The notes beneath the pieces were generated by a model. The model did no database searches. It was not told the DNA's origin and saw nothing but the letters and a program-made list of their open reading frames with translations. DNA of 63,805 nt, the filler included, from Salisapilia sapeloensis CBS 127946 (taxonomy: Eukaryota > Protista > Oomycota): the NCBI GenBank assembly GCA_023334545.1. It is 4 parts of 4 records of this genome, joined end to end, with 100 filler letters (N's around TTAATTAATTAA, not from the genome) between each part and the next. Parts side by side here need not be neighbours in the genome. Positions count along the whole stretch, not along the records: positions 13,981 to 43,490 come from JAADVB010000227.1; 3 more parts are not named here. One strand, given 5' to 3'. The position numbers and the translations under genes were made by a program. Below, piece after piece: positions 8,060 to 43,325 of the stretch. Numbering within the stretch: position 1 is the first letter of the stretch; the number at the start of each line of letters is the position of its first letter.

Positions 8060-8190
8060 TGTTCCGAATTGAGTCTGTCTCGATATGGTGTGCATATTTC
8101 TATAGACATGTATGTAGCTTATATTGTGGATTCTACTTATCTTGAAGTTTGTATGTGGGATATGGCAGGCTAAAGACAACCGAAAGCAAA

Positions 8191-8774
8191 ATGGCGACAC
8201 GAGGTGCATGGCAGCTCAAGCAGCTCACGATCCGGTACTGCCAGTACGGTGGTAGCAGTCGCAATGTCAGGTAAATTTATATGAGGATTATCGTGAGCGT
8301 TTATTTGTATATTGAGGTTTTATTGAAATGTAGGGAGATGCTGCGTAGCGACCGATTCCGTCAATTTGTCGAGGCGAACCCGCAGGTGCAGTTCCAGACA
8401 GAGATCAAGAGTGCTCGTCACCCAATCGTCATTGGAGACTACGGTACGGATCCATAACAGCATCTATACGCAATAATAGTCGTATAAGTTCTAACTATGC
8501 TTGTCATGTAGTCTCGGACCACCGCAAGGTCTGCGATGTCAAGAACCAGGACATTGAGTCTGTCATGAAGCAGGTTTGTACAGTTATAAAAAGCCAACCT
8601 CTTTTTCCAATCACTAAATGGCATGATTCTGTAAATTAGATTGAACGCATGCGAAACACGAGTGGCCGGAAGATGACGAAGTTGAAAAAGCCTGTGGTGA
8701 CGGAGAAGCCGACTTTCCAGGGCATTTGGCAGCAAGACATGGAGTTCCCAGAGTTCACCATCGAGCACCAATAG
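8191..8774 (+). CDS. MRPL43: Mitochondrial ribosomal protein L43 (mL43); exons 8191-8270, 8334-8443, 8512-8573, 8640-8774
   Basis: Manual splicing at GT-AG introns of 63, 68 and 66 nt gives MATRGAWQLKQLTIRYCQYGGSSRNVR...HPIVIGDY...KPTFQGIW. Missing from the ORF track because of the introns. Confidence 0.9.
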
Positions 8775-22024: not shown

Positions 22025-25000
22025 CTACTCGTATGTTCCTATAGACTTTGGAGCTACCTTCCACACTAGCAAACTCTGGTCTCGTCCTCCGACGCTCACA
22101 ATATATTCATCGTCGCATGTGAATGAGACGTTTGTGACGCTCGCCCCATGACCACTGAGTATTATTGCTTGCTCACCTCTGGTGACACATGGGGACGGCA
22201 GTAAGCGTATCTCGCCGTCGTTGTTAGCTGCCGCTAGCCACGGACTCTTGTGCGCTCTGGCCACGGCGTCAAATGTCAATTGAGGGTACGCTGGATCCCA
22301 TAAGCCCTGCGTCTCCCATGTCAGCACGCAACTAGCGTTTGCCCACTGGACGTCTCGCATGGTCGAAACGCTCGTGACCTGGCTTCCATCCAATGTACTT
22401 ACATATATTAACTCCATCGCGTCCGTATCAAACCGAACGACTGAGCTGTCGGAGGAAAAGTCCAGGTGCATGACTCGACCCGTGGCTCTCGTGAACTTAA
22501 AGCGAAGCGCAAAGCCGTCCAGTGTCGAGTATATATACACAGCGTGATCGTTGCCACCCATCGCGATCATCGTGCCATCGGGTGAAAACACCATATCATT
22601 GATACTTTGTCGCGAGTCACGACCTTCGTGCAGAATTTCGAGTGAGATGGCATCGAGGACTACGAATGCACCATTCTTCTTGCCATTCATATCGCCTCCG
22701 CCTTCACTCGCACTGGTTTCTCCGGTCGTAGCTTCGCCATATCCCACCGCTAGCCAGACACCGTCACCAGAATATGCAGCCGCTCTTAACGGAGCATCCA
22801 ATGTCGCTTTACTTCGAGCTTCCTTCTTTATCAGATCCCAAACACGTACAGTTTGGTCTTCTCCAACCGTTGCAACCAAGTTTGGATCAGTTGGATGGAC
22901 TGATAATCCAGACAGATACCCGAGACCTGCATGACTTTCTAGCACCAACGCTGTATCGCTCGTAATTTGGGATAGCTCGAGCAGCTCTCCTGTCTTTGTG
23001 CCTACAAGTATGCGGTTGGTTGGTGTGTCCCAGTAGACGCTCTTAATGATTGGACTGAGAGGAGTTGGTCGAGCATTTGATATGTCAAATTCTGCTAAAG
23101 GTGTGATGTCAGTAGTCCAAAGACGAACTCTGCCATCAAAGCCGCCAGTTACCATTCCAGTTGACGAAGTATGCACAGCATAGATTGGGCCATTGTGAGC
23201 TGGTACGACTTTACTCACCACCGCTGCGTTCCAGACATAAAGCTGCCCGTTGGAGCCACCTGTAATCGCGGAAGATCCCATCGATCCACCACAGAGCTGA
23301 GGTATGGACCGACCATCCGAACGAGCGCTGTGTTCTCCACGTGTTACTATTAGCTGTGGTGCATCGATCTTCCAGAATAAAACGTCGCCTTGACCGCCCG
23401 ACACCAAGTGGTAACTTGTCTTGGAAGTGTCCTCCACGAAGGTAGCGAAGAATACTCGTTCTCTTCCACACTTTGCAGCGCAAAGCAGAGTAGCATCAGA
23501 CCACAGACCACTGGTAGATGTGTACACTGTAATTGAATGGTGTTCATCCTGCCCGACAGCGGCCAAAAGCTTCCTGGAAGGATTAAAAGCAATGTAGCTA
23601 ATTGCTTTGCGATGAAAAGGACCAAGCTCTGTGACTTTTTTGCATGCAGAAGGTTCCCAGATATGTATGACGGGGTTTTCTCGCTGTGAGTCATGATTGA
23701 CCATTTCTCCTGTAGCAGCTAAAGACCCGTCCCCACTTTGAGCTAGACATACAATCGGTCGTGAATGCTGCGTGTACAGTGTTTGCTGGCCGAGCCTTCG
23801 ATCGTAACAAACTGCAACGCATCCTGCTGGAAACAAGATATGCCCGGATCGACAGTAAGATGCATTGTTTCTCGCATCATATGCACGAAATCCAAAGATA
23901 TGCTCCAGTTCGAACGTGTAATTAAACAAAGTTGTTTTCGACTCAGCCGCTGCAGTGCTTTCGCTGGCATCGGATGGAGCGATGATTGCACTCATATAAG
24001 GTTTTACAACCTCGCCTGCACCAAACGATAGCAGCATGCCACAATTCTCAGGGATAAATTGTCCCTCGAGCTGAAGCTCTGGCTCGATTTCCATCTCCTT
24101 TGTCCCTTCTTGCACTATAGCAGGAACTCTGGATACATCTTCACTCTCACTTACTCCTGTAATTTTCTTCACTCTCCATTGCAGTACGCAGCGGTCGAGT
24201 GCTCCAGCCGTCATGCAGTGGGACCTTGAAGGTGAAAACGCAAGCCGTGAGACCTCGCCAGAATGGCCAGCGTAAGATCGCCAACCAGCTCCATCGATAA
24301 AGCATGGAAACTTGAACAAGCGTAATGAACCATGCGTCATCCCCGCGATAAGAAGCTCTTCCTCGCCAGTATCAGCATGGTCTTTAGAGCTAAGACTTGA
24401 ACTAGCAGATGCAAATGGAGCGACAACATGCTGCGCCTGGGTTGCAGCAGTTGAAGCTGGCCACATACCTCGATTTGACCAGTTGTAAAGAGTCGTGCAA
24501 GTATCCCATGTTAAATCACGCAGCGCAGTAGCGCTTGCCACATGTGATCCTGTGGTAATGTCAGCAAAGAGCAGTTCGAATGCTCCACAGGAGCTTCGTA
24601 GATACTGCGAGTCGCTCGATATGTCAATATTTGTGATAAAGCTCTTGTGCTTGGAGAAAACGGCGCGCTTAGAAAAGTTGTTTGGTACGTCGTAGATGTA
24701 AACATTATTGTCGAGTGCGCCAACAACGAGCGATTGGCCATCCGGAGAGAAAACCGTGACACTGATGGGCATCTTGCAATCCCGTGTCTCAAAGACTAGA
24801 TCCACACTCATGCCGTGATCTTCAAAGACAAGTAGGCCCCCATCTTTCTTGTGGCGCTTACCTTCCAAGCTTCCGCCTAACCCAACCGCGATGAACTCTC
24901 CTTCAGGCGCATACGCACAAGCCCGACTTGATGTGTCTATTGCCTGCTCGATTACTAGAACGTGCCGCATGGAATCCCAAACGCGTAGAACCCCGTCATC

Positions 25001-28000
25001 TCCTGTTGTGCACATACGATTTTTCGTCGCGCATACGCTCATCCCGAGAAGGCTACCTTTAAAATGATGAGATAGATTGGAAATGTCCACTCCATCCGGA
25101 GTACGTGGCAAGATTCTTGTGCCATCTACTGCGGACAGTTGATGCAGACCACAATCCCGTGTACCGACGAGAAGGATGCCACGATCATCGTCCCAAAACA
25201 CACTTCTAATGGCATACTTCATGACATTAAATTCAGTAAACTCTGCCAGACACTCGAGCTCGTTATTCCACAATTTTACAACTCCATCTTTACCTCCACT
25301 TGCAAGCTGAACAGCCCCAGCTTTTGTTTTGCAGCAATGAAGTGCAGCTACGCATCTAGTGTGTGCACTTACGACACTCATGAGTTCCGGACCTTTGAAT
25401 CGGAACAATTCTCCACTTGTTGTACCAACTATCGCGTCTCCAGCATTACCAAACTCGACCACGCTTAAAAAGGTTTGCTTCATGCCTCGTTTGCCGAATA
25501 CCCCTTCCTTTTTTACCAGGTTACCATTGCCGAGTCTCCATAGTGTAATTGCGTTGACACCGACGGTCATCAAATTCGTGTAGCTAGGTGCGGCTTGGGC
25601 GTCTCCATCTCGCGGTGTAATTGAGACATCAGGCAAAAAGGTCAATCCACAAATCCGACCGACTTGACTAGCTGAAGCTTGGGCAAGAAGTGTCTTGTTG
25701 CGCCAGTCGTATATGGCTAATGTACATGTAGCATCTAAGTCAACACTCGCCAACAAGACTCCAGATGAATTAAAGCGTAGCTCAGAGACACCGCATCGAT
25801 GTACACCACGAAGAGAAGCTAGCAATTCTAACGTATCAATCCTCCATACGTGAATCGCTGGGTATTTCCCACTTTCTCCAGATGCAGCAATTTCACCAGA
25901 AACACGCTCAGCCGATGACTTGGATGTTGGCGGTCTATCGCCCGTCATTGGTCGAGCCGATCTCGACATTTGGCTTCCGCAGTGGATAGCAAGAGAGAGC
26001 ACAGCCCCTGTATGCTGCTTGAAATGGCGCTGAGTCCACAGCTTTGGGTCTAGCACAACGACAATATTAGCAGCAGGATAAACCCAAAGACCTTTTGCTT
26101 TAGTGATGAAAGCGTTATTGCGAGCGTCTTCGCTTCGATAGCCGTATACCCATTCTAATTCCAAATCTGTCGACGGAAGAGCAGCCAACTGAATCTCCTC
26201 TTCTCTTGGAGCATCTTTGGGGGGAACTGCGCTGGAAACCCATGGCTTAACAGGAGCTACCTTGACTTCCTTTTCAGCAGCATCTACCGCTTGTTTCTCT
26301 TTGTACTGGTGTAGCAGCTCAATGCCAAAGTCACCAGCCCTCACTGCTTCATGATCTACATCTGGCTCCTTAATATCGTCTCGAAGTTCCAATTCATCGT
26401 CCGATGTAGGATTGTATTCGTACTCATCAGCGTGATGGACGTCATTACTAGTGTCGTCGTACTCGACTCGCCACTGGAAGATGCAGCGATCCTTCTGAGA
26501 GCAGGAAATGACAAACTTATTCTCAGCGGTAAAGAGAACGTTAGAGATGCTTGTAGCTGACGCTTTAAATAGCTGACCTTGGCAATCGCCAGATGCACAA
26601 GGGTATCGATATAGACGTAGAATCCCATCTGTGTCTCCAGTAACTAGCAAGGGCTCTATCACGCCACCTTGTCCAATGTATGATCGGGCAGCTGAACTAA
26701 CCTCATAGCAGCTTTTAGTCGTCTGAGGCCATGCACCTTGCATCGGCCATCCGTATATGCATGTCCACGTATGCCAATCAATGTCTTTGAGTGTCGCTAT
26801 ACGAGTGATTTCGACTCCTGATGCCACTTCGAAGAAAGCCATTTCACCCTTGTTCACTGCATTAGCCATGATGTACTCTTCGGAAGACGCAAAGTCCAGA
26901 TGACTAAGGACCAAGCTAGTATCACGGGTTTTACATTTGCCTTTGGAAGCCCAATCCTCTGCATTGTACAGATAGATATTGCAGTCACTCGAGCCCACGG
27001 CCAGTGTCTGACCGGTCGACGAAAACTTCACATTTCGAATTGCACGCTTAGCGTCCTTTGCTTCGTACTGAACTGCCAGTGAACTCTCCTTTAAAATAAC
27101 GAAAGCACCTTGTCGATCGGGATTGACCAGCGGCATATCGTAAAATCGAGGTAATAGGGCTTCATCATCAGTATCCGCTCCTTGGCCAACAACTAGACTC
27201 GTGCCATCAGGAGAATAGCCACAGCTCCGTAGCGGTGACTCCAGTGTTGCTATTCTAATTAAACGATGATTCTCGATATCCCACACACGCACCGTCCGAT
27301 CATCGCCGACTGTCGTAACCAGTTGCTTCATCGGATGAGTGGCCATGCCATGGAGTTCATACGCATAGTGGTTGTTTATGATTGCCCCTCGATGTAAATT
27401 GGATCCATCGTTGGCCGATATCTCGTATACTTCCGCACCAGAAGTACTTACGATGAGCTTTGCTCCTCCATCAGGTGAAGCAGCTAAGCTGTGTATGCGT
27501 GAAGAAATACTACCCAAGGCATCAATGTCAAAGGTCGGACCAGGCTCTAGCCGTTTGCTCCACATTCTGACTTTGCCATCTTTCCCACCGCTAATCAAAC
27601 CACCAGAGTACGTATGCAAGACGTTGACAGCAGATCCATGAGCTTTGATTGCTTTGACGCAATTTCGTCCTTCAAAGACAAGGATATGTCCTTGAGACGC
27701 TCCAGCTAGTATCATGTCCACACACCCAGTGTTCTTTTGCTGTGCTGGAGATAGTTGAAGCACTGCTACGCACAGTAAAGCTTGCATCTTTGCAGTGGCA
27801 CCAAGAATGCCTGGTCGTTTGAGATAAGATATGTTGCCTGGAGCTTGCCGGTCGGCAGTTTCTTGATGCCAAAAGAAAATGTGACGTTGACCACACGTGA
27901 CGAAATCGAGTCCAGACGTAGTTGTTATACACCCGAGTATCTGCTCTCGACCACATCGGTCAGCAAAAATTATCGAGGGACTTTGTGGCCAGTCAACGCG

Positions 28001-29320
28001 ATTATCTGTCGATTTGTTGGCAGCAAATGGCCACTGGTAGACAGCCACGGTGTGGAAGGTATCTTCGCCAATTGATACTAATGTCCGTCCGTCGGACATC
28101 CACTTTAAGTCTGTGATTCCCATCGTATGGAAACCTTGAATGACACTAAGTGGACGAACGAGTTGTTGCGAGTTCCATATCACAATTTTCGACCGGAGCT
28201 GCCGACCTTCGCCAGAAGCTACTATACGTCCGTTCGTGGGATTGATTGCCAAGCATTGCACGGGGCCAGAGTGGAAAGTCGCAAAGCGTTGTTTGTGTTG
28301 AATGACATCGTACATGATCACGACAGCTCCTGCTGGGTAGACTATTTCGCCGACAGAAAGATACCGCATCGACTGGCGTAGATCACTATTAAACCCATAG
28401 ATCCAGTCAAGGCTCAAGCTAGCATTTGGTAAAGTCGGATCAAGTGGTGGTGGGGCACTTGGCTCCGCGTTCTGTACGACCATCTGCCATGGCTGTACAG
28501 GCAATGGTTTGTCTTCCGCAAATATTGGAGCTTTGGGATCCAGTGGAAAGCTGACAGTGTTGGTAGACGTACTCGAAGATGTCGCCGTATATGTCGTGGC
28601 TAATGGAAGAGTGGCGCTGTCACTGACTTCTTGGTCTACTGTGAATCGATTTTGATTCGTAAAGTCTGTACCATTGTCAAAGTAGTCGACCCATGTCATG
28701 ACTTCTGGCATTGTATTAGCAAATTTGAGAAACTCAAACAACGTGAGCGTGTCTTCCGATGAGGTCTTTTGAGATTGATGGAAAGCGTGGATCGCAATGT
28801 CTTCTAAAGTCATTTCGGACGGGCATGCAATGTCGAGTGAAAGCTTGCATAAACCAGTTAGAGTGGATCGCATTGCCAGTGTCAGTTCATCGACAGACAC
28901 TTCTCCAGCCTCATTAAAGTCGTAGCAGTTGTAGATGAAAGTGAGCTTTCGATCAATTGGCATTGCTGATATCATTGCGATTGTACCGAGGAATTCGAGA
29001 GCATCTACTAGCCCATTGTCGTCCGTGTCAAGAGCTTGGAAAAGTGCCGCTGACAGCTGATCCATATCTAACCGGATCGTGATTTGCATGGAAGATTGCA
29101 GTGCTCGACAAATCTCAACCAGTTCGTCCTGGTTTAGACCAAAGCCTTCCGCGACGTCATTAAATCCCTCCCAGAGCTTATTGATATCTTTTTCCGATGC
29201 TGCATTAACAACCCATTGTTCAGTTACATTGTCAAGTCGATATTGCATAGATGATTGCCTACCATTAAGAAAAGGTTTTGCAGCTTGGACGAAGCAAGCC
29301 TTGCCGTGTAGTTGACCCAT
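22025..29320 (-). CDS. EF-hand plus triple HELP/WD40 (TAPE) EML5/6-like protein
   Basis: First ATG is 29320 (the ORF-track start at 29332 is TTG). EF loops DTDDNGLVDALE and DFNEAGEVSVDE. Three KPW/QPW/KPY...L(D/E)(W/H)(I/V)(Y/F)G HELP motifs, each followed by WD40 arrays. Confidence 0.88.
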   Translation of the reverse strand: MGQLHGKACFVQAAKPFLNGRQSSMQYRLDNVTEQWVVNAASEKDINKLWEGFNDVAEGFGLNQDELVEICRALQSSMQITIRLDMDQLSAALFQALDTDDNGLVDALEFLGTIAMISAMPIDRKLTFIYNCYDFNEAGEVSVDELTLAMRSTLTGLCKLSLDIACPSEMTLEDIAIHAFHQSQKTSSEDTLTLFEFLKFANTMPEVMTWVDYFDNGTDFTNQNRFTVDQEVSDSATLPLATTYTATSSSTSTNTVSFPLDPKAPIFAEDKPLPVQPWQMVVQNAEPSAPPPLDPTLPNASLSLDWIYGFNSDLRQSMRYLSVGEIVYPAGAVVIMYDVIQHKQRFATFHSGPVQCLAINPTNGRIVASGEGRQLRSKIVIWNSQQLVRPLSVIQGFHTMGITDLKWMSDGRTLVSIGEDTFHTVAVYQWPFAANKSTDNRVDWPQSPSIIFADRCGREQILGCITTTSGLDFVTCGQRHIFFWHQETADRQAPGNISYLKRPGILGATAKMQALLCVAVLQLSPAQQKNTGCVDMILAGASQGHILVFEGRNCVKAIKAHGSAVNVLHTYSGGLISGGKDGKVRMWSKRLEPGPTFDIDALGSISSRIHSLAASPDGGAKLIVSTSGAEVYEISANDGSNLHRGAIINNHYAYELHGMATHPMKQLVTTVGDDRTVRVWDIENHRLIRIATLESPLRSCGYSPDGTSLVVGQGADTDDEALLPRFYDMPLVNPDRQGAFVILKESSLAVQYEAKDAKRAIRNVKFSSTGQTLAVGSSDCNIYLYNAEDWASKGKCKTRDTSLVLSHLDFASSEEYIMANAVNKGEMAFFEVASGVEITRIATLKDIDWHTWTCIYGWPMQGAWPQTTKSCYEVSSAARSYIGQGGVIEPLLVTGDTDGILRLYRYPCASGDCQGQLFKASATSISNVLFTAENKFVISCSQKDRCIFQWRVEYDDTSNDVHHADEYEYNPTSDDELELRDDIKEPDVDHEAVRAGDFGIELLHQYKEKQAVDAAEKEVKVAPVKPWVSSAVPPKDAPREEEIQLAALPSTDLELEWVYGYRSEDARNNAFITKAKGLWVYPAANIVVVLDPKLWTQRHFKQHTGAVLSLAIHCGSQMSRSARPMTGDRPPTSKSSAERVSGEIAASGESGKYPAIHVWRIDTLELLASLRGVHRCGVSELRFNSSGVLLASVDLDATCTLAIYDWRNKTLLAQASASQVGRICGLTFLPDVSITPRDGDAQAAPSYTNLMTVGVNAITLWRLGNGNLVKKEGVFGKRGMKQTFLSVVEFGNAGDAIVGTTSGELFRFKGPELMSVVSAHTRCVAALHCCKTKAGAVQLASGGKDGVVKLWNNELECLAEFTEFNVMKYAIRSVFWDDDRGILLVGTRDCGLHQLSAVDGTRILPRTPDGVDISNLSHHFKGSLLGMSVCATKNRMCTTGDDGVLRVWDSMRHVLVIEQAIDTSSRACAYAPEGEFIAVGLGGSLEGKRHKKDGGLLVFEDHGMSVDLVFETRDCKMPISVTVFSPDGQSLVVGALDNNVYIYDVPNNFSKRAVFSKHKSFITNIDISSDSQYLRSSCGAFELLFADITTGSHVASATALRDLTWDTCTTLYNWSNRGMWPASTAATQAQHVVAPFASASSSLSSKDHADTGEEELLIAGMTHGSLRLFKFPCFIDGAGWRSYAGHSGEVSRLAFSPSRSHCMTAGALDRCVLQWRVKKITGVSESEDVSRVPAIVQEGTKEMEIEPELQLEGQFIPENCGMLLSFGAGEVVKPYMSAIIAPSDASESTAAAESKTTLFNYTFELEHIFGFRAYDARNNASYCRSGHILFPAGCVAVCYDRRLGQQTLYTQHSRPIVCLAQSGDGSLAATGEMVNHDSQRENPVIHIWEPSACKKVTELGPFHRKAISYIAFNPSRKLLAAVGQDEHHSITVYTSTSGLWSDATLLCAAKCGRERVFFATFVEDTSKTSYHLVSGGQGDVLFWKIDAPQLIVTRGEHSARSDGRSIPQLCGGSMGSSAITGGSNGQLYVWNAAVVSKVVPAHNGPIYAVHTSSTGMVTGGFDGRVRLWTTDITPLAEFDISNARPTPLSPIIKSVYWDTPTNRILVGTKTGELLELSQITSDTALVLESHAGLGYLSGLSVHPTDPNLVATVGEDQTVRVWDLIKKEARSKATLDAPLRAAAYSGDGVWLAVGYGEATTGETSASEGGGDMNGKKNGAFVVLDAISLEILHEGRDSRQSINDMVFSPDGTMIAMGGNDHAVYIYSTLDGFALRFKFTRATGRVMHLDFSSDSSVVRFDTDAMELIYVSTLDGSQVTSVSTMRDVQWANASCVLTWETQGLWDPAYPQLTFDAVARAHKSPWLAAANNDGEIRLLPSPCVTRGEQAIILSGHGASVTNVSFTCDDEYIVSVGGRDQSLLVWKVAPKSIGTYE

Positions 29321-29595
29321 GATGTTATCCAAGTCCTGCTGGTGCCTATAGCCGAGTGGTCACTTCGGCGTGACCGTTCAAAAGATCTCCGCGGTCGAAC
29401 GAAAGATCAGGATACGTAAAACCGTTTCAAGTGCGTGGTAAGCAGTATCAGAAGGTATTGAAGTAAGAAGATAAATAAAGCTTATGGTGAAGTATGTAGA
29501 TGTGAAATTTCGTGGTTTATCTACATCAGCCAGCGTGTGGATACGTTGGCTCTTGGTAACCAGCGGAATAGCCTAATTTAGGAGAAGGAAAAAGC

Positions 29596-35961: not shown

Positions 35962-37924
35962 GATCTTTTTTTACATTTTTCACCTTTGGTATAAGTGGTC
36001 TTGGCTCTGGCGTACCACCCTACGAGCAAGAAGGACATAATACAAGCAAGTTGATACGACGAAATTGTGCAAAATAAAAAGATATTTGGAGTTGACTAGT
36101 TTTGCTTGGTGCTGCTTTCCGTTCTGGAAGAGATTGTTTTGATGTGTGGAAGGATGCGGGTAGATACTTGAGACAGTGTTTGATGCTGTTAATATCATAT
36201 CATGAGCTGGAAGAAGATAGTCATCGCGTCGGTTACCAATGGTGAAGGAAGATGTTTGATAGGTCTTTTGAGGAAAACGTGCTTGTCGAGGCTGGATGAG
36301 ATCCAATTGAACTCGACGCATATTTGGAAGGTAGACTTGCTAGGTAGAATCTATTGCTAAACAGTTGAACTGTTCGCACGATACATCTCGGGTCGCACAT
36401 CTTGCAGTGTGCAGTAGCAGTATTTTTGACCGTCTAGTAGCTGTCTAGCTATACATCCGCTTTGACTAATGATCGAGCAATTTTATAAAGGCAGAAAGTA
36501 GATTGTACGGATATCAACAGATAGCTAGGACTAGAAAAGAGTTGATACAAAAGAGTTTTTTACTTGGTCATTGCTCGGTTGTATCATGCTAACAGCGAAA
36601 GCAGAAGTTACGGTCAAATCCTTCAAGTAGGTATTGATGTACACAAAGCTTTGATGTATCTTTAAGACAGCAGGGTATAGATAGTGTTTTAATGCTGCTC
36701 GCAGCTCACGTACGTGCGACAAACAAGCTTCTCTCAATACGCATGGGCATTTGCTACGTGGTACCGTCCAGATTGAATTGGAGAACTAGATTTCCTTCGT
36801 GTCTTCTTGTAAGCTTATGACAAAGTCGATTAAAGGCTCACAGCTAACTGACCACAAACCAGATCTGTGCAAGCATGATGCAAGCGTGAAAGTCTTACTA
36901 CGGAAGCTTTATAGAGGCAATATTCGAGTGCAATCACGAAGCTGCGCAAGCTATCACTAGCTCAAGATAAAACACCATACATTCGATGGACTTGGACAAG
37001 ATACGTTCCAGATAAAAAGGCATTGCAACAAGACTGACAGCTACAAGCTTCAAATCTCTCTGATTAATGGATATGTCTGATAAACTCTATCTTGTAGCAC
37101 ATCATGAATCCCATCCATTCAGCTAAATCGGGTAGGACTTCATGTCGACTAGACGTCGGATATAATCAGGTTGCTGTTTTGAGCTAGTACGCCAGCACTT
37201 GCACTGACTGCCTCTACGTTCCTTTCAATTTATCGCGCGATCACTGATATGCCTGCGCCTTTCTTCGTGCAAGAAACATTGCTCTTCCGCGTCGTCGTCG
37301 CATACAGTACACCTACATGCTGTGTTTGTAACTTTTGACTTGGTGACCTTGGTGTCAGCATTGATTGGTGGCATCTCGACTGTGATGGACTTTCCTTGTG
37401 CCTTCCTCTCCGCGTGTACCTGCTAGTGTAGCTTTACACGCTTACGTGGAAGTTTTCACTACTTTGAAAGCGACGTGGAGGAGAAGGTTCAGACTTTCCT
37501 CGAACCCCAGAAGCCATTTGAGGTCGTGGTATCGCCTATTCAAGACGCTTCCGGAGTCACACCCGTATCAACTGTCTCATCCCACCCAGAATCCATTCTC
37601 AATCTTGGCATCAAACTTGAAACATTCGCTCCACCCACCATGAATGCACCAGACACGATCGTTGCCTTCCTAGGCACCACCTCGCGTAGTGCGTATCCAT
37701 TTAAACTCGAAATAGAATAGCAGCTCCATCTATTTACTATCTCAACTTGCACCAATCACACACAAGCATAAAGAGCGAGGTAGGTTTAAGGTTTATTCCT
37801 CGTCCCAGCATTCAAAGTTGTAGATTACACCCACCACGGGGTAGGTTTATTCTGGCGACATTTGGACGAATCGACCGGTAGCTACGATCGGAATTTGCAC
37901 CTATCCACTTCGTCCTATCAGTTC

Positions 37925-37935
37925 GATTCACTTGC
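37925..37935 (+). promoter_or_regulatory. Inr-like element upstream of the P4-ATPase (GATTCACTTGC)
   Basis: Identical to the eIF1 upstream 11-mer; 66 nt before ATG 38002. Confidence 0.4.
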
Positions 37936-38001
37936 GTAATCAAAGCGTCGAGCACTCGTGGTCTGAGTCTAGTCGCTTCCACTTCGTAACTCGTCGTACT
38001 C

Positions 38002-41000
38002 ATGGCGAAGGGCAACGGCTTGCCGTTCTCGTTGACGAAAGACACAAAACCTCCGCGTAATAACAGTCGATTGCGACAGACTATTGCCTCGCCATCGCCG
38101 TTCGGGAGTGGCTCGTCCTTCACATCAGTCACCAACGCCGATGCGAGAAGCCAAGAACAACGTGCTTTAGCGTTTGCACGGCATCAAACAGTGGAAACGT
38201 TGCCACAAGTGCCTCCAGAAGCAAGGCTGCATCCGCTCCAGCCATCCCGCGACCTCTTTCGAACGTACACCGAGTCTGACCTGAATGCACTCCGAACGAA
38301 CTATTATACAACTGGCGAAGGCAGTACGAGTGACTACAACCGGCATGTCGGAGATGATTATAATGGTCCGCTCACACCACAGACACCGAGGACGCCTAGA
38401 ACACCGAGGACACCCTCTCGAACGCCATCGAGTGCAGCAATAAGGAGGCGAGTGAGTAACTGGGGCTACCGTGTCTTCACGAGACCATTGCCTCGGTCCT
38501 TGCGATGGCACGCGAATGGCAGAAATTATACTCGGTACATGACACGAGGCAATACGGCCTCCTTACAAACGCGTTTGCGTAAGAAACGAGAGCCTTCGTT
38601 TAATGAAGCAGACGAAGGGCCAGGCCTATCAGCCTCAGTAGAAGATCCTGCACTAGTACCTCAGCGTTCTATGAGCAGCTCTGTCCTGTCGATGGAAGCA
38701 TGGTTTAACTCTGCTGCCGAGACGATGGGGTACGAAGTCAAAGGCGAGTCCAGTCGCATTGTGAGTATCAATGGCGGAGGACCGGCGGACTTTAAAGACA
38801 CCGAGCCAGTGGTCGAAGCGCCCGAGGAGGAGGAAGAGGAAGAGTTCGCAAGCAACGAGATCCATACGTACCAGTACACGTGGTGGTCCTTTGTCCCTGT
38901 CTTCCTTTACCTCCAGTTCAGCAAGACAGCCAACTTGTACTTTTTGCTCATCGGTATCCTGCAGCTGATCCCAAGCATCAGTCCAACCGAAGGCGTACCT
39001 CTCCAGTTCATTCCACTCACAATCGTCACAGTCATCGACGCACTCTTTGCTGCGTACGAAGACTACAAGCGTCATGAAGCAGATGATGAAGCCAATTCCA
39101 CCAAGACTGTTGCGTTCAATCGTTTCTCTAGTCAATTTGAAACATGTGAGTGGCGGGATCTCAAGGTCGGTGATTTTATTCGACTTGAAAATCATGAAAC
39201 AGTCCCAGCAGACGTCCTGATTCTAGCTGTGACACCTGCAGAAGGTAGCAACGCAGGAGGAGCTGCTGGTGTCTGCTACGTCGAGACGAAGAATTTGGAT
39301 GGAGAAACGAATCTCAAGCTCCGAGAAGCTCCGTCCAAATTATCCCACGCCATGTTCTTAAATGAAGAGAACGCTGACAAGGTCGGATTCGGCTACGTCG
39401 AGAGCGAGGCACCGAATGGAGATATTAACAAGTACTCTGGAACCATGTACCTCGATGGTTTTCGAGACGACGACCTCTTGTCTGGACTGGAGAACGGGAA
39501 GGAGCGGCAGGGGATGGGACTGAATCTAAAGAACATGCTGTTACGAGGCAGTCGCGTTCGGAACACAAAGCAGGTGTACGCCCTCGTGGTGAACACTGGT
39601 GTGGACTGTAAGATCATGCGTAGCTCTGGCGACGGATTCGCCGTCAAGGTGAGTAGCATCGACGAGATGACAAACCGCCAGGTTATCATGGTCGTCATAC
39701 TACTCGTCATCATCTGTCTCATCGGTGCAATTGGCAACCAATTGTGGTCGTGGGATGACATGGGCGCGTCGGAAAAGAGCCACGAGATGTTGGATGACAA
39801 GCTGACACAGACTGCGATTGGTGCCTTTGTCTATTGGTTCACTATGCTCGCGTCCATGGTGCCGATCACGCTGTACGTGTGCATAACGCTCGTGAAAGCT
39901 CTGCAAGGGAAGTTCATGCAGATGGACCTGGACATGTACGACCCGGCATCCGATTCGCCTATGCTCGTCCGGAACATGCAGCTGAATGAACAGCTAGGAC
40001 AGATCTCTCATGTCTTTTCCGACAAGACCGGGACGCTCACATGTAACATCATGGAGTTCCGCAAGTGCAGTATTAACGGCGTTAAGTACGGCAAAGGCAC
40101 GACTGCCATCGGTCGAGCAGCTCGCATGCGAGATGACTTTGTCGGCGATCCTGTGTCGGAAGAAGAGGACGATGATTTGGACGTGAAAGAGATGGTGGAG
40201 AACGTGAACTTTAAAGACGCATCATTCTGGCAGCATATCGGAGGACAATCCACTCAGTCGACGTACATTCGCGACTTTTTCCTCCACTTGGCGCTTTGTC
40301 ACGGCGTCTTGATCGAAGAGGATGAGGAAAAGCATGAGATCAAGTACTCTGCGTCCAGTCCGGATGAACAAGCACTCGTATGTGGTGCCAAGTACGTCGG
40401 ATTTGAGTTTGTAAAGAGAGAACCAGGTAGCGTCTGGGTGAAGAATCCAGAGGGACAGGTCGAGATTTATGAAGTGCTGGAAGTATTTGAGTTTGACAGC
40501 GCTCGGAAACGCATGACAATCGTCGTCCAGCGTCGAAGGAAAGACACGGAGTTGAGGCAGATGACGAGCAGTGACGACGACGAAGGAGATGAAGTGCTTA
40601 TCTTGACGAAAGGAGCCGACAGTGCCTTGGTGCCGCGGCTGCAAAGTGGAGAAGAGGAGCATGTGAAGAAGACGCTCGACCATCTCGAAGCGTTTGCACG
40701 TGACGGACTTCGGACACTTGTGGTCTGCTCCAAGAAACTGACGCATTATCAGTGGCAGGCGTTCCACGTCCGATACCGTGCTGCGATTGCCGACATGAAC
40801 GAAGTGGGGAAGCTGAATCGAGGAGAAGAGAATCTGATCTCGAGGCTGCAGGAGGAAATGGAGTCGGATCTACAGCTACTTGGCGCTACTGCCATCGAAG
40901 ACCGACTGCAGGACGGCGTGCCGGAGACCATGGAGCGTCTGGCAATTGCTGGCATTGGCGTGTGGGTGCTTACGGGCGACATGGAAGAGACGGCGATCAA

Positions 41001-42966
41001 CATCGGATATGCCTGCCGTCTCTTGCATAACGGTCTGCAGCGTCACGTCATTAACAGTGCGTCATACGAGACCAAGGCGCGTATTCTAAAGGAGCTAGAC
41101 CGAGTCTTTCATGCTGTGCATGATGATCCGGAGGGAGACGGACATGCGTTGGTGATTGACGGCGCGAGTCTCAATCTTATTCTCCCGGACCCGTTGCTGA
41201 ACTTGCATTTGTTGCGTCTAGCACTTCTATGCAAAGTGGTGATTGCTTGTCGCGTGTCGCCACAGCAAAAGGCTCAGCTAGTGGAACTCGTCAAGGTGAA
41301 TGTCGAGACATCGCATACGTTGGCGATTGGAGACGGCGCGAACGATGTGCCGATGATCCAAGCAGCACATGTCGGTGTGGGCATCAGTGGACAGGAAGGC
41401 ATGCAGGCTGTGAACACGTCGGACTTTGCGCTGGCTCAGTTCCGGTTCCTCGCTCCGCTCTTGCTGACGCATGGTAGATGGAACTATGATCGCATCGCTG
41501 CTTTGGTCGTGTATACGTTCTACAAGAACGTTGCGTACTGCCTGTCCTTGTTCTGGTACACGCTGGCCCAATCCGGATACTCTGGTACGATGGTCTACAC
41601 AGCATTCATCCAGCAAGGTTACAACCTGTTCTTCACCTCTTTTCCCATTGTCATCTTGGCTGTGTTCGACAAGGACGTACCGAGACAATCGACGCTTGAT
41701 TTTCCTGTCTTATACCATCACCAGGCACGTGAGAGGAGTGAGTTCACGTACGCCAAGTTCTGGTACTGGATCGTCATGGGCTTTATCGACTCGGTGCTCA
41801 TCTACTTTGTCTTCCTCGGAGCATCATATACGATCACTGGAGACGGAGGGACGATGCCATTCGAAGTGCTGCAGTCTACAGCATGGACTGTCCTCTGTAT
41901 CGCCGTGAACGCACGTTTCTGTGTAATGGTCCGATCGTGGGATCAGCTGGAAATGTGGGGACTTCTCGTCTCGGTCCTCTTCATCTATCTCGCCCAGTGG
42001 CTCGTGGATGAACTTCCGCTCGGGTATGAGACTGGATCCTTCCCGTGGGTCTTTGGATCAGCAGAGTTCTGGATGGGTCAAATACTCGCTGTTGCTGTCA
42101 TCTTGGCGAAAGACGTCTTTATCGAAACGTACCTCTGTCGCTTCCGACCTTCCTACTTGGACTTAGTTCGAGAGACGACGTTGGCGAGTGACCGGAAGAT
42201 TCAGAAGAGTTTTCAGGACGTCAAAGCCACTGACAATGACGATTCGATTGATTACGTACGTCAGGAGACACCTGCAAACGCACAGCAGGAAGCAGTTCTG
42301 AGAGACGAGGAGAACCAGATGTCTCCTGTAGAAGGACATGAGGCAGCCATACAACGACTGAAGGACGTCCGACCTCCACAACCTTCGTTCCTCACGACGG
42401 AATTAGCTTCGATGATGGACTACCGAGAGCGTCGGATGCATGAAGCTGCTCCTGTGCCTCGATCAGCACCGAGAAGAGCCCCGTTGTATCGCGGCTTTGC
42501 CTTCGAACAGCCGGCGCAAGTGTTCGACTGGATCTTGTCGGGACCTCAGTCGAGAAAGCAGACAGTGGACGCCACTGTACGACAGCGTATTCTTAATTCC
42601 GATGATCCGGTCATCTTTGAGAATGAACGTTATCAACCGTTTTGTGGATTCGGAAGCACCTATCCAGGGTACTTGCTCCCTACGGACCGAAGTCGATGGA
42701 GTGATCGCTCTGGTAAGATCAGCGCCATGGCGATCCCGTTGATGGGTCTCGAGTTGGATCTGGATGTGCCTGGAGCGGATAGCGACGGATGGATATACGC
42801 GAAGGACTTTAAACTCTTCAACGTCAACAAGGTGGAACCGCCGACGGGAGGCATTGGCGGCATCCCGCCTGGACTTGTGCGCAGACGGCAGTGGAAACTG
42901 TCGGACGAGTATCGAGAGAAACTGCGCGATAGTCGCGCGTCAAGTGTGCGGCATACGGTAGTGTAG
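38002..42966 (+). CDS. P4-type ATPase (phospholipid flippase) with C-terminal DysF-like domain
   Basis: YVETKNLDGETNLK, VPITLYV, DKTGTLT phosphorylation site, SSPDEQAL, GDGANDV and QAVNTSDFA; C-tail RGFAFEQ followed by DysF motifs; intronless. Confidence 0.95.
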   Translation: MAKGNGLPFSLTKDTKPPRNNSRLRQTIASPSPFGSGSSFTSVTNADARSQEQRALAFARHQTVETLPQVPPEARLHPLQPSRDLFRTYTESDLNALRTNYYTTGEGSTSDYNRHVGDDYNGPLTPQTPRTPRTPRTPSRTPSSAAIRRRVSNWGYRVFTRPLPRSLRWHANGRNYTRYMTRGNTASLQTRLRKKREPSFNEADEGPGLSASVEDPALVPQRSMSSSVLSMEAWFNSAAETMGYEVKGESSRIVSINGGGPADFKDTEPVVEAPEEEEEEEFASNEIHTYQYTWWSFVPVFLYLQFSKTANLYFLLIGILQLIPSISPTEGVPLQFIPLTIVTVIDALFAAYEDYKRHEADDEANSTKTVAFNRFSSQFETCEWRDLKVGDFIRLENHETVPADVLILAVTPAEGSNAGGAAGVCYVETKNLDGETNLKLREAPSKLSHAMFLNEENADKVGFGYVESEAPNGDINKYSGTMYLDGFRDDDLLSGLENGKERQGMGLNLKNMLLRGSRVRNTKQVYALVVNTGVDCKIMRSSGDGFAVKVSSIDEMTNRQVIMVVILLVIICLIGAIGNQLWSWDDMGASEKSHEMLDDKLTQTAIGAFVYWFTMLASMVPITLYVCITLVKALQGKFMQMDLDMYDPASDSPMLVRNMQLNEQLGQISHVFSDKTGTLTCNIMEFRKCSINGVKYGKGTTAIGRAARMRDDFVGDPVSEEEDDDLDVKEMVENVNFKDASFWQHIGGQSTQSTYIRDFFLHLALCHGVLIEEDEEKHEIKYSASSPDEQALVCGAKYVGFEFVKREPGSVWVKNPEGQVEIYEVLEVFEFDSARKRMTIVVQRRRKDTELRQMTSSDDDEGDEVLILTKGADSALVPRLQSGEEEHVKKTLDHLEAFARDGLRTLVVCSKKLTHYQWQAFHVRYRAAIADMNEVGKLNRGEENLISRLQEEMESDLQLLGATAIEDRLQDGVPETMERLAIAGIGVWVLTGDMEETAINIGYACRLLHNGLQRHVINSASYETKARILKELDRVFHAVHDDPEGDGHALVIDGASLNLILPDPLLNLHLLRLALLCKVVIACRVSPQQKAQLVELVKVNVETSHTLAIGDGANDVPMIQAAHVGVGISGQEGMQAVNTSDFALAQFRFLAPLLLTHGRWNYDRIAALVVYTFYKNVAYCLSLFWYTLAQSGYSGTMVYTAFIQQGYNLFFTSFPIVILAVFDKDVPRQSTLDFPVLYHHQARERSEFTYAKFWYWIVMGFIDSVLIYFVFLGASYTITGDGGTMPFEVLQSTAWTVLCIAVNARFCVMVRSWDQLEMWGLLVSVLFIYLAQWLVDELPLGYETGSFPWVFGSAEFWMGQILAVAVILAKDVFIETYLCRFRPSYLDLVRETTLASDRKIQKSFQDVKATDNDDSIDYVRQETPANAQQEAVLRDEENQMSPVEGHEAAIQRLKDVRPPQPSFLTTELASMMDYRERRMHEAAPVPRSAPRRAPLYRGFAFEQPAQVFDWILSGPQSRKQTVDATVRQRILNSDDPVIFENERYQPFCGFGSTYPGYLLPTDRSRWSDRSGKISAMAIPLMGLELDLDVPGADSDGWIYAKDFKLFNVNKVEPPTGGIGGIPPGLVRRRQWKLSDEYREKLRDSRASSVRHTVV

Positions 42967-43325
42967 AAATTGACAAACTGTATTTACAGCTGAACAAGGA
43001 CTTTTATCAATTTCCTTTGTATTATTTGAAGATCTATAAGTGTTGAATAAGTGAAGCAGACAGATAGACAGGAGAACAGATATCGTGGTAGATACTCCTC
43101 TTGAGCGACTACAATTGCAAAAGACTACTGTTAGTTTGTCTACTTGTGTATATATTATAACAAAATGATCCTTTCTGCAACAATTACGCAATCAAAATCG
43201 TTCCGAGAAGCTACTGACGCAGTAGCTTCAGATACTCGAGCAACATGGTACATTTACGTCACGCGAGGCTTGTAGGCATTGCAAGATCGTTTTCAAGTCA
43301 ATCTAGAGACAAACGCAATTCAGCA

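What the first reader, a model, noticed from the sequence alone, without database searches (positions are those of the whole stretch)
42487..42966. P4 flippase with a DysF domain directly after the autoinhibitory GFAF motif
Seen: after the last TM helix the tail carries YRGFAFEQ (42487-42510). About 35 aa later come IFENERYQPFCGFG...LLPTDRSRWSDRSG and DSDGWIYAKDF...LVRRRQW (about 42610-42900). Established: G(F/Y)AFS is the autoinhibitory C-tail motif of Drs2/ATP8 flippases. These two blocks are the N- and C-halves of the DysF fold (dysferlin, Pex30, TECPR1). The TECPR1 DysF recognises cytosol-exposed sphingomyelin, and the Pex30 DysF binds phosphatidic acid. Inference: a flippase whose brake is coupled to a built-in lipid or asymmetry sensor. 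I do not know this fusion from animals, fungi or plants.
Basis: partly seen in the sequence, partly recalled or inferred. Interest (0 to 1): 0.7.

Follow-up and report, generated by a model that had tools for sequence, protein, structure and literature searches.

The report
Oomycete flippase with DysF tail domain
An oomycete lipid flippase carries a genuine but trimmed DysF (dysferlin-type membrane-binding) domain about 30 residues after the conserved GFAF brake motif of its tail; I found this build only in oomycetes and in no paper, and what it does is still untested.

Summary
Window 38002-42966 (+) is one uninterrupted 1654-aa P4A lipid flippase of the Drs2/ATP8A class. Its tail has GFAF at aa 1498-1501, and a roughly 100-aa domain at aa 1534-1634.

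That domain is a real DysF domain:
- The tail alone hits bona fide DysF proteins (TECPR1-like, VPS13-like, VASt-DysF, Pex24p-like) at E 1e-8 to 1e-15 in a 1.84-billion-protein library.
- A family profile hits the solved TECPR1, myoferlin and dysferlin DysF structures.
- A confident model (pLDDT 89.5) superposes on TECPR1 N'DysF (Z 8.5, 2.8 Å over 91 residues).

Pfam misses the domain. It is trimmed: the inner Trp hairpin is deleted, and the TECPR1 sphingomyelin residues K152/K153/W154 are absent.

Transcript-like contigs from two independent runs cover exactly the whole gene, unspliced. The fusion is conserved in two sister paralogue families (39 and 20 proteins found), all named ones from oomycetes. 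Only 2 of this genome's 10 P4-ATPases carry it.

The "brake coupled to a lipid sensor" idea is plausible but untested. Tail docking on the P+N domains got only weak support (0.46 against 0.01 for controls). No paper describing the fusion was found. I file it as a new variant of known kinds.

The parts
38002..42966 (+). Complete intronless ORF, 1654 aa: a P4A-type phospholipid flippase (here called flipA)
   Evidence: ORF listed. Pfam PhoLip_ATPase_N and PhoLip_ATPase_C are above their cut-offs. The closest solved structures are Drs2p (E 4e-187) and ATP8A1.
37892..43005 (+). Extent of the transcript-like contigs (5114 nt in run X3; 5056 nt, 37950-43005, in run X2)
   Evidence: each run has one whole contig with 0 differences and no joints, and zero depth in the immediate flanks. 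The library type is not on record ('RNA?' is a guess).
38371..38433 (+). Low-complexity TP(Q/R)TPRTPRTP repeat inside the long N-terminal extension (aa 1-272) that precedes the flippase core
   Evidence: Translation; Pfam finds nothing before aa 273.
38818..38994 (+). PhoLip_ATPase_N (aa 273-331)
   Evidence: E 2.9e-22, 78.6 bits against a cut-off of 29.
40021..40035 (+). DKTGT phosphorylation motif (aa 674-678). DGET is at aa 433 and GDGAND at aa 1110.
41410..42150 (+). PhoLip_ATPase_C (aa 1137-1383), covering TM5-TM10; the last hydrophobic segment ends at about aa 1380
42493..42504 (+). G-F-A-F motif (aa 1498-1501), the counterpart of the Drs2p GFAFS autoinhibitory motif; here it is followed by E instead of S
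   Evidence: It is invariant in all 28 aligned orthologues and 100% identical as a segment.
42505..42540 (+). Conserved segment after the motif (aa 1502-1513; consensus (D/E)QPAxIVNWIL), predicted helical
   Evidence: 52% mean identity; P15 invariant; W21 and L23 nearly invariant.
42601..42903 (+). DysF domain (aa 1534-1634), trimmed type. N-half is aa 1534-1572, the shortened middle aa 1573-1594, GWxYxxDF aa 1595-1606, and the last strand VRRRQW aa 1623-1634.
   Evidence: Sequence homology. Fold. Protein-language-model neighbours are all PF06398 clusters.
42820..42867 (+). Hypervariable loop of the DysF domain (aa 1607-1622). It sits where TECPR1 has K152/K153/W154. It is 17 aa here and 9-61 aa in orthologues, where it is often Lys-rich.
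   Evidence: 7% mean identity.

Best explanation
Shown: the gene encodes a catalytically intact Drs2/ATP8A-class P4A lipid flippase. Its cytosolic C-terminal tail (aa 1381-1654) holds the invariant GFAF motif, a conserved short helix, a linker of about 20 residues, and then a trimmed DysF domain. The whole is made as one unspliced message. It is conserved in two sister paralogue families across oomycetes.

Inferred from Drs2p, ATP8A1 and ATP8B1: in the resting enzyme the GFAF stretch lies in the cleft between the P, N and A domains and blocks the cycle.

[quoted passage not shown] The linker is short and the headpiece sits far above the bilayer. So DysF on the membrane and GFAF in the cleft should be hard to have at the same time. 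Binding of the DysF tip to some feature of the cytosolic leaflet would then pull or hold the brake off, which is lipid-gated activation. The lipid is unknown. It is unlikely to be recognised as in TECPR1, because that site is not kept.

My odds: the DysF identity and the fusion are real, about 0.97. The regulatory coupling as described, about 0.4.
For: - Flippase identity.
- GFAF invariant in 28 of 28 aligned orthologues, and G[FY]AF[SA] present in five other P4-ATPase paralogues of the same genome. Its role in Drs2p and ATP8A1 is documented (10.1101/606061; PMC11775268).
- DysF by sequence. phmmer of the tail hits a TECPR1-like protein (P0062, E 7.4e-10), a VPS13-like protein (P0061, 6e-10), VASt+Pex24p proteins (P0057, 1.4e-11) and P0048 (3.7e-15). 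In each case the matched stretch coincides with the Pfam Pex24p region at profile positions about 230-358.
- The family profile A2 hits the solved DysF structures: 8p5p at 2.2e-21, myoferlin at 5.6e-11, dysferlin 4cah at 6.1e-8.
- DysF by fold. The AF2 model has pLDDT 89.5 and pTM 0.81. Foldseek matches 8p5p at E 5.8e-5, probability 1.0. VIA-align gives Z 8.5, 2.8 Å over 91 aa; the only other matches at Z 5 or more are myoferlin and dysferlin DysF.
- One mRNA.
- Strong constraint: the DysF N-half is 90% identical on average across oomycetes, against 37-52% for the flanking tail.
- Families A and B are sisters even with the tails removed.
- DysF tips bind membranes in TECPR1 and Pex30 (PMC10476172, PMC12101078).
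- In these hits DysF is repeatedly fused to lipid-handling modules: VASt, VPS13, C2, C1, Lipase_3.
- Tail against the P+N domain: ipSAE 0.46 against a best control of 0.01. The tool's verdict is 'weak support'; the three runs agree in at least 63% of contacts and the partner's pLDDT is at least 73.
Against: - No experiment here or in the literature touches this tail.
- The complex prediction pass is weak by the tool's own counts: only 5 of 78 solved complexes pass at 0.60 or under, and all 4 passing mismatches scored in that range. Autoinhibited Drs2p and ATP8B1 structures exist, so it may also reflect memory of them.
- The TECPR1 lipid-site residues K152/K153/W154 map to G/I/P, and that loop is hypervariable.
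- The domain is near neutral (net -5 to +4). This argues against a simple anionic-lipid clamp.
- The inner Trp hairpin and R165/R167 of the Trp-Arg ladder are lost in family A.
- The very high conservation of the N-half would fit a protein-protein surface at least as well as a lipid site.
- The motif reads GFAF-E/D rather than GFAFS in family A.
Confidence: 0.4

Rival explanations
1. The DysF domain is a targeting or tethering module. It places these two flippases at a particular membrane or contact site, as the Pex30 DysF does at ER contact sites, and does not gate the GFAF brake.
For: Pex30 needs its DysF for contact-site localisation (PMC12101078), and the TECPR1 DysF recruits that protein to damaged membranes (PMC10476172). 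Only 2 of the 10 P4-ATPases in this genome carry the domain, which fits paralogue-specific addressing. C-terminal tails of other P4-ATPases carry targeting signals (table quoted in PMC11775268).
Against: A ten-helix membrane protein is already anchored in a membrane, so a weak lipid-binding finger adds little for addressing unless it acts in trans. The constant short spacing to GFAF in both families (about 33-65 residues) suggests a link with the brake.
Confidence: 0.3
2. The DysF domain is a protein-binding surface. Either it is part of the autoinhibitory plug itself, packing on the A/N/P headpiece, or it is the docking site for an activating partner, playing the part that Arf-GEF Gea2p or Arl1 play for Drs2p. 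Lipid is not its ligand.
For: The N-half is 90% identical across oomycetes, much more than DysF domains in general (28% mean column identity in A2). The lipid-site loop known from TECPR1 is not conserved. The whole tail scored 0.46 against the P+N domains, with controls at 0.01 (weak support).
Against: Among the papers I read, only lipid or membrane ligands are documented for DysF domains. The complex tool returned no interface, so it is unknown whether the DysF or only the GFAF stretch made the contacts. A weak pass is more often wrong than right unless the guess was likely beforehand.
Confidence: 0.2
3. Artefact: the resemblance to DysF is chance, or the tail belongs to a separate neighbouring gene that has been joined to the flippase by a wrong gene model.
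For: Pfam gives no hit on the tail. The first AF2 model, built from orthologues only, was poor (pLDDT 60).
Against: The 1654-codon frame is continuous. One contig in each of two runs spans the gene exactly. The same build is found in 39 plus 20 proteins from many genera. Library-wide E-values reach 1e-15 against true DysF proteins, and there is a fold match at Z 8.5.
Confidence: 0.02

Closest known systems
Drs2p (yeast) and ATP8A1/ATP8A2/ATP8B1 (human): P4A flippases with an autoinhibitory C-terminal G(F/Y)AFS tail
   Same: Same ATPase class; these are the best PDB matches (6psy E 4e-187, 6k7g). The catalytic motifs are intact. A G-F-A-F motif sits in the cytosolic tail after TM10 and is followed by a conserved segment, as in Drs2p, where residues up to about 1302 are needed for inhibition (10.1101/606061).
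   Different: The tail is much longer (274 aa), with GFAF 118 aa after TM10. The serine of GFAFS is E/D in family A. A folded DysF domain follows the motif, whereas the known tails end in disordered sequence. No PI4P, Arf-GEF or phosphorylation control has been shown here.
TECPR1 N-terminal DysF domain (PDB 8P5P), a sensor of cytosol-exposed sphingomyelin
   Same: It is the best structural and profile match. The shared signature is ENxR-aromatic, LLPxDR..WS, GWxYAxDF and VRRRxW. The equivalents of tip residues R76, W77 (here Y), L88, L89 and D143 are kept.
   Different: K152/K153/W154 are not kept, and W154 is essential in TECPR1. The W116/W118/W122 hairpin is deleted and R165/R167 are lost. 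The domain is near neutral instead of strongly basic. It is attached to a pump, not to an autophagy E3 adaptor.
Pex30/Pex24p-family DysF domain (yeast), which binds phosphatidic acid at ER contact sites
   Same: Same domain family: the hits reached from this tail match Pfam PF06398 positions about 230-358. In both cases the domain sits on the cytosolic tail of an integral membrane protein (PMC12101078).
   Different: The membrane part is a reticulon-homology domain, not a pump. The Pfam model does not reach its cut-off on the flippase tails (best E 0.0066 to 0.23). The PA-contacting aromatic and basic cluster has not been mapped here.
P4-ATPase-guanylate cyclase chimeras (P4GC) of alveolates and oomycetes
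   Same: Another C-terminal domain fusion to a P4A flippase in the same lineage (PMC13466520). This genome has two of them, 2609 and 2529 aa.
   Different: The fused part there is a large membrane cyclase and the flippase is thought to serve the cyclase. Here it is a small soluble lipid-binding-type domain behind the brake motif. In the tree the P4GC genes are distant from families A and B.
Inner DysF domains of dysferlin and myoferlin (PDB 4CAH, 2K2O, 9H6X)
   Same: Same fold (Z 6.3, 5.0 and 6.5), and profile hits at 6e-8 to 6e-11.
   Different: Ferlin DysF domains are nested and carry the full Trp-Arg ladder. They were not recruited to damaged membranes in the TECPR1 study (PMC10476172).

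Membership tests
P4-ATPase (lipid flippase), P4A / Drs2-ATP8 class | The N- and C-terminal P4-specific Pfam domains score above their curated cut-offs | tested here: met
   PF16209 scores 78.6 bits (cut-off 29) and PF16212 scores 208.8 bits (cut-off 28.3).
P4-ATPase (lipid flippase), P4A / Drs2-ATP8 class | The P-type catalytic motifs DKTGT, DGET and GDGAND are intact | tested here: met
   They are at aa 674, 433 and 1110.
P4-ATPase (lipid flippase), P4A / Drs2-ATP8 class | The closest solved relatives are P4A flippases | tested here: met
   Drs2p at E 4.3e-187 and ATP8A1 at 1.3e-186. Neo1 and ATP9 (P4B) are much weaker, at 1e-93 and 5e-88.
P4-ATPase (lipid flippase), P4A / Drs2-ATP8 class | ATP-driven lipid transport together with a Cdc50 subunit | not testable with these tools
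   This needs biochemistry.
Drs2p-type autoinhibited C-tail | A conserved G(F/Y)AFS motif in the cytosolic tail | tested here: met
   GFAF is invariant in 28 of 28 orthologues. The fifth residue is E/D in family A and S in family B.
Drs2p-type autoinhibited C-tail | The tail docks on the N/P/A headpiece | tested here: inconclusive
   Complex prediction gave 0.46 against a best control of 0.01, verdict 'weak support'. It may also reflect memory of solved homologues.
Drs2p-type autoinhibited C-tail | Removing the tail activates the pump | not testable with these tools
   This needs an ATPase assay of truncated protein.
DysF domain (dysferlin / Pex24p-Pex30 / TECPR1) | Significant sequence similarity to established DysF domains, covering both halves | tested here: met
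   Single-sequence phmmer gave E 1e-8 to 1e-15 against proteins whose matched stretch is Pfam Pex24p above its cut-off. Profile A2 hits 8p5p at 2.2e-21.
DysF domain (dysferlin / Pex24p-Pex30 / TECPR1) | The fold: a central pair of long antiparallel strands with a wrapping loop | tested here: met
   The model (pLDDT 89.5) has strands at residues 11-18 and 99-106. Z 8.5, rmsd 2.8 Å over 91 of 105 residues of 8p5p_B. Caveat: the alignment that guided the model includes true DysF domains.
DysF domain (dysferlin / Pex24p-Pex30 / TECPR1) | The Trp-Arg stacking ladder (TECPR1 W116, W118, W122, W138 with R159, R161, R165, R167) | tested here: inconclusive
   Family A keeps only the equivalents of W138 and of R159 and R161. 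The W116/118/122 hairpin is deleted and R165/R167 are L/D. Family B keeps one more Trp and R165. This makes it a trimmed version of the ladder.
DysF domain (dysferlin / Pex24p-Pex30 / TECPR1) | The Pfam PF06398 model reaches its cut-off (a detection criterion, not a structural definition) | tested here: not met
   There is no hit on this tail at E<=1. Orthologue tails score at best E 0.0066 and 0.23. PF06398 models the whole 358-position Pex24p protein.
TECPR1-type sphingomyelin sensor | The sphingomyelin-site residues, above all solvent-exposed W154 with K152/K153 | tested here: not met
   By alignment they are G, I and P here. The loop is 9-61 aa long and 7% identical among orthologues. I do not file the domain as a sphingomyelin sensor.

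The most novel reading that the evidence does not exclude
The pump carries its own leaflet sensor. The DysF finger reads a property of the cytosolic leaflet that the pump itself changes (a product lipid, phosphatidic acid, or packing defects) and releases or re-engages the GFAF brake accordingly. That would give oomycetes a self-contained feedback device for membrane asymmetry, doing within one polypeptide what PI4P, Arf-GEF and Arl1 inputs do for Drs2p.
Probability: 0.2. Interest if true: 0.8.

Novelty: new variant of a known kind. Interest (0 to 1): 0.6.

Why it matters
How P4 flippases are switched on at the right membrane is an open question. The known answers (PI4P, small-GTPase regulators, tail phosphorylation) all act in trans on a disordered tail. 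Here a folded domain of a membrane-binding kind is wired in cis about 30 residues behind the brake motif, and it has been kept in two paralogue families since before the oomycete radiation. That gives a compact natural system for testing whether lipid binding can gate a flippase.

It also adds a trimmed DysF type, without the inner Trp hairpin, to a domain family whose biochemistry is only now being worked out. It shows that Pfam-based surveys miss this domain; the published domain picture of Phytophthora PcApt1, for example, used Pfam alone.

Oomycetes include major crop and animal pathogens, and one oomycete P4-ATPase has been shown to matter for growth and infection (PMC9127794). Whether that gene belongs to family A or B was not determined.

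Tried and rejected
- Pfam on the whole protein and on the tail gave no family on the tail. Pfam on ten orthologue tails or fragments gave only sub-threshold Pex24p hits.
- phmmer of the tail against PDB sequences gave nothing relevant. The profile built from orthologues only (A1) hit TECPR1 DysF first, but only at E 0.36.
- AF2 with the orthologue-only alignment gave a poor model (pLDDT 60). Its Foldseek search was not significant. I replaced it with the model built on alignment A2.
- Aligning 91 full-length hits as a vehicle for a bulk Pfam scan failed. I scanned 31 hits in batches instead, and screened all 149 listed hits (P0040-P0188) locally for a flippase core.
- Complex prediction of the P+N domains against the tail gave weak support only (0.46 against 0.01). 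I report it as weak, not as evidence of binding.
- Two hits in the phmmer list are bacterial repeat proteins (P0074 at E 4.4e-8 and P0171 at 2.8e-4, made of Ig/PKD/CHB_HEX domains). I treat them as compositional false positives.
- The TECPR1-like sphingomyelin-sensor reading is rejected because the key residues are absent.
- The gene-model artefact reading is rejected.
Full report
**1. What is in the sequence**

Window 38002-42966 (+) is a single open frame of 1654 codons. Pfam places PhoLip_ATPase_N at aa 273-331 and PhoLip_ATPase_C at aa 1137-1383, with the usual P-type domains between them. DKTGT (aa 674), DGET (aa 433) and GDGAND (aa 1110) are intact, and the last hydrophobic segment ends near aa 1380. 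The closest solved proteins are Drs2p (E 4e-187) and ATP8A1, well ahead of the P4B enzymes Neo1 and ATP9. So this is a P4A flippase of the Drs2/ATP8 class. It has a 272-aa low-complexity N-terminal extension and a 274-aa C-terminal tail.

YRGFAFEQ starts at 42487, and the FENERYQPF...LLPTDRSRWSDRSG block, DGWIYAKDF and LVRRRQW follow before the stop.

**2. One gene, one message**

Two runs of the same organism from an independent 2019 study each hold one whole contig lying on 37950-43005 (5056 nt) and 37892-43005 (5114 nt). Both have no differences and no joints, and depth is zero in the immediate flanks. That is the pattern of an assembled transcript covering the 5' UTR, the full ORF and a short 3' UTR. 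However, the library type is only guessed to be RNA, and contigs cannot show strand. A related organism (about 93-95% identical) also covers the tail.

**3. The tail is conserved**

A search confined to aa 1480-1654 found 39 flippase-length proteins at E 2e-54 to 5e-19. All the named ones are oomycetes: Phytophthora, Peronospora, Hyaloperonospora, Bremia, Plasmopara, Pythium, Globisporangium, Lagenidium and Albugo. Saprolegniales (Thraustotheca, Aphanomyces) appeared in the exhaustive search.

GFAF, FENxR and RRRxW are in nearly all of them. In the 28-sequence alignment A1, 43 columns are invariant. Segment by segment, mean identity to the window protein is as follows:

| Segment | Mean identity |
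|---|---|
| GFAF | 100% |
| Following helix | 52% |
| Linker | 37% |
| DysF N-half | 90% |
| GWxYxxDF stretch | 62% |
| Loop before the last strand | 7% (length 9-61 aa) |
| Last strand | 70% |

**4. Is it DysF?**

Pfam says nothing about the tail, and the orthologue-only profile reached TECPR1 DysF only at E 0.36. The decisive result is the exhaustive phmmer search with the tail alone against 1.84 billion representatives. It gave 169 hits at E<=1e-3.

Besides flippases, the hits include:
- P0048 (E 3.7e-15),
- P0057, a VASt+Pex24p protein (1.4e-11),
- P0061, VPS13-like (6e-10),
- P0062, with Hyd_WA, Tectonin and Pex24p domains, i.e. TECPR1-like (7.4e-10),
- P0065, P0069, P0066, P0094, P0118 and others.

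In each of these, Pfam Pex24p scores above its cut-off at profile positions about 230-358, exactly where the tail matches.

A 60-sequence alignment (A2) shows the shared signature: E-N-x-R-aromatic, G-(W/F)-G, LLPxDR..WS, GWxYAxDF and VRRRxW. Its profile hits the solved DysF structures: TECPR1 8p5p at 2.2e-21, myoferlin at 5.6e-11 and dysferlin 4cah at 6.1e-8.

With A2 as input, AlphaFold2 gave a confident model (pLDDT 89.5, pTM 0.81). Foldseek matched it to 8p5p at E 5.8e-5 with probability 1.0. VIA-align gave Z 8.5 and 2.8 Å over 91 of 105 residues. The only other matches at Z 5 or more were myoferlin (Z 6.5, and 5.0 for the NMR entry) and dysferlin (6.3) DysF domains.

The language-model neighbours are all PF06398 'Peroxin/Ferlin' clusters. 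The same genome supports the link. The A1 profile also finds a classical DysF gene on contig C587, a piece of which hits Pex24p at 4.9e-4, and a VASt protein with a DysF N-half.

I take the DysF identity as established. One caveat is that the good model was guided by an alignment containing true DysF domains. That is legitimate given the sequence homology, but it is not an independent line of evidence.

**5. What kind of DysF**

Compared with TECPR1 N'DysF (residue roles from PMC10476172), family A has deleted the hairpin carrying W116/W118/W122 and has lost R165/R167. It keeps the equivalents of W138 and of R159 and R161.

Of the sphingomyelin-site residues:
- R76, L88, L89 and D143 are kept, and W77 is Y or F.
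- S90 is P, and I142 varies.
- K152/K153/W154 fall in the hypervariable loop and read G/I/P here.

Net charge of the domain is -5 to +4, unlike the basic TECPR1 domain. So this is a trimmed DysF that should not be filed as a sphingomyelin sensor. PA binding, as shown for Pex30 (PMC12101078), is neither supported nor excluded.

**6. Distribution and origin**

The genome (22.4 Mb, 1365 contigs) has ten P4-ATPase loci:
- Two carry GFAF plus DysF: this gene, and a 1474-aa paralogue on C628 with YTGFAFS followed by a DysF that keeps more of the classical features.
- Four have G[FY]AF[SA] and one has GNAFS, all without DysF.
- One has neither.
- Two are flippase-guanylate cyclase chimeras.

The C628 type is also oomycete-wide, with 20 proteins found.

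In a maximum-likelihood tree, families A and B are sisters (95/90). They remain sisters when only the pump core (aa 272-1385, 1068 columns) is used (0.926). The simplest history is one fusion in an early oomycete followed by duplication.

Among the 149 listed phmmer hits screened (P0040-P0188), only five have a flippase core. With P0010 and P0039 from the first search that makes seven, and all the named ones are oomycetes. I found no example elsewhere. However, more divergent fusions could lie below the 150 hits listed or beyond the word-index sensitivity, so absence outside oomycetes is not proven.

**7. How it may work**

[quoted passage not shown] GFAFS sits at the vertex of P, N and A over the nucleotide site, and residues up to about 1302 reach the A domain and are needed for inhibition. 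PI4P and protein partners relieve the inhibition (10.1101/606061; PMC11775268).

By homology, the invariant GFAF here and the conserved helix after it would do the same. This is inference. The only test available, folding the P+N domains with the tail, gave 0.46 against 0.01 for controls, a 'weak support' verdict that may also reflect memory of solved homologues.

The DysF begins about 20 residues after that helix. DysF tips insert into membranes in TECPR1 and Pex30. In the hits seen here the domain is again and again joined to lipid-handling modules: VASt, VPS13, C2, C1 and lipase. The most economical mechanism is therefore a membrane-binding finger on a short leash behind the brake. Membrane engagement of the finger and cleft engagement of GFAF would compete, which gives lipid-gated activation.

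I put about 0.4 on this. Two rivals remain:
- A pure addressing or tethering role (0.3).
- A protein-binding or plug role (0.2). This one is favoured by the unusually high conservation of the N-half and by the loss of the known lipid-site loop.

**8. Novelty**

Full-text searches found no paper combining a DysF domain with P4-ATPases, flippases or oomycetes. The P4GC survey and the 2009 survey of oomycete chimeric genes do not mention it. The PcApt1 study lists only the Pfam flippase domains.

Automatic annotation has noticed the domain at least once: UniRef names an Aphanomyces flippase tail fragment 'Peroxin domain-containing protein'. Both parts are known kinds, and the combination and the trimmed domain type are what is new. 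I rate it a new variant of a known kind, with interest 0.6.

**9. Surroundings**

The neighbouring genes are ordinary eukaryotic genes with no evident link to the flippase: a BK-type K+ channel, an SDF symporter, a 2435-aa EML-like WD40 protein, a PX-domain protein, a kinase and an RRM protein.

Noticed in passing
L009:3157-3666 (- strand) = G000:C587 about 8156-8665: A classical DysF domain with the full W.W..W hairpin, GWIYAFDF and VRRRRW. It is interrupted by one in-frame TAG between the two halves, and a 940-aa open frame follows in the same frame. This may be a short intron or a broken gene. The upstream piece hits Pfam Pex24p at E 4.9e-4.
   Followed up: partly
L008:3107-5938 (- strand) = G000:C649: A 944-aa protein with two VASt lipid-transfer domains ends in a DysF N-half (IFENQR...LLPTDRGRF). 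The C-half matches just downstream of the stop, so an intron or frameshift probably splits the domain. VASt-DysF proteins recur among the hits (P0057, P0069, P0088, P0108, P0113, P0139).
   Followed up: partly
L007:3391-7812 (- strand) = G000:C628: A second flippase paralogue (1474 aa) has YTGFAFS followed about 65 residues later by a DysF that keeps more classical features (a Trp in the middle, and RRRRWVRK). Its family is also oomycete-wide.
   Followed up: yes
L015 (G000:C423) and L017 (G000:C507): Two flippase-guanylate cyclase chimeras of 2609 and 2529 aa, the P4GC type already described for oomycetes and alveolates.
   Followed up: partly
window 42505-42507 (aa 1502) and alignment A1: In family A the residue after GFAF is always acidic (E/D), where Drs2p, the ATP8 proteins and four other paralogues of this genome (including the DysF-bearing C628 gene) have Ser. 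This could be a fixed phosphomimic-like change, but its meaning is unknown.
   Followed up: no
window 38371-38433 (aa 124-144): A TP(Q/R)TPRTPRTPRTPSRTPSS proline/threonine/arginine repeat lies in the 272-aa N-terminal extension. It may be a phosphorylation-rich regulatory region.
   Followed up: no
alignment A1, columns about 160-235 (loop before the last DysF strand): In Peronosporales the hypervariable DysF loop is expanded to about 50 aa, with an acidic run followed by a poly-Lys run (for example RKKNKKKKxKK). The window's protein has only 17 uncharged residues there.
   Followed up: partly
proteins P0053, P0054, P0061, P0067: DysF domains related to this tail occur with Lipase_3 (a dinoflagellate protein with five DysF stretches), with PDZ and C1, within a VPS13-like protein that also has a Vps62 domain, and with C2. 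This is a broad association with lipid-handling proteins in protists.
   Followed up: partly
window 22025-29332 (- strand): A very large (2435 aa) intronless EML-like protein with several tandem EML beta-propellers and three HELP motifs.
   Followed up: no
proteins P0074 and P0171 (one search list): Two bacterial repeat proteins (He_PIG/Big_9/PKD and CHB_HEX_C_1 arrays) appear in the phmmer list at E 4.4e-8 and 2.8e-4 with many short stretches. They are likely compositional false positives, a reminder that not all 169 hits are DysF.
   Followed up: partly
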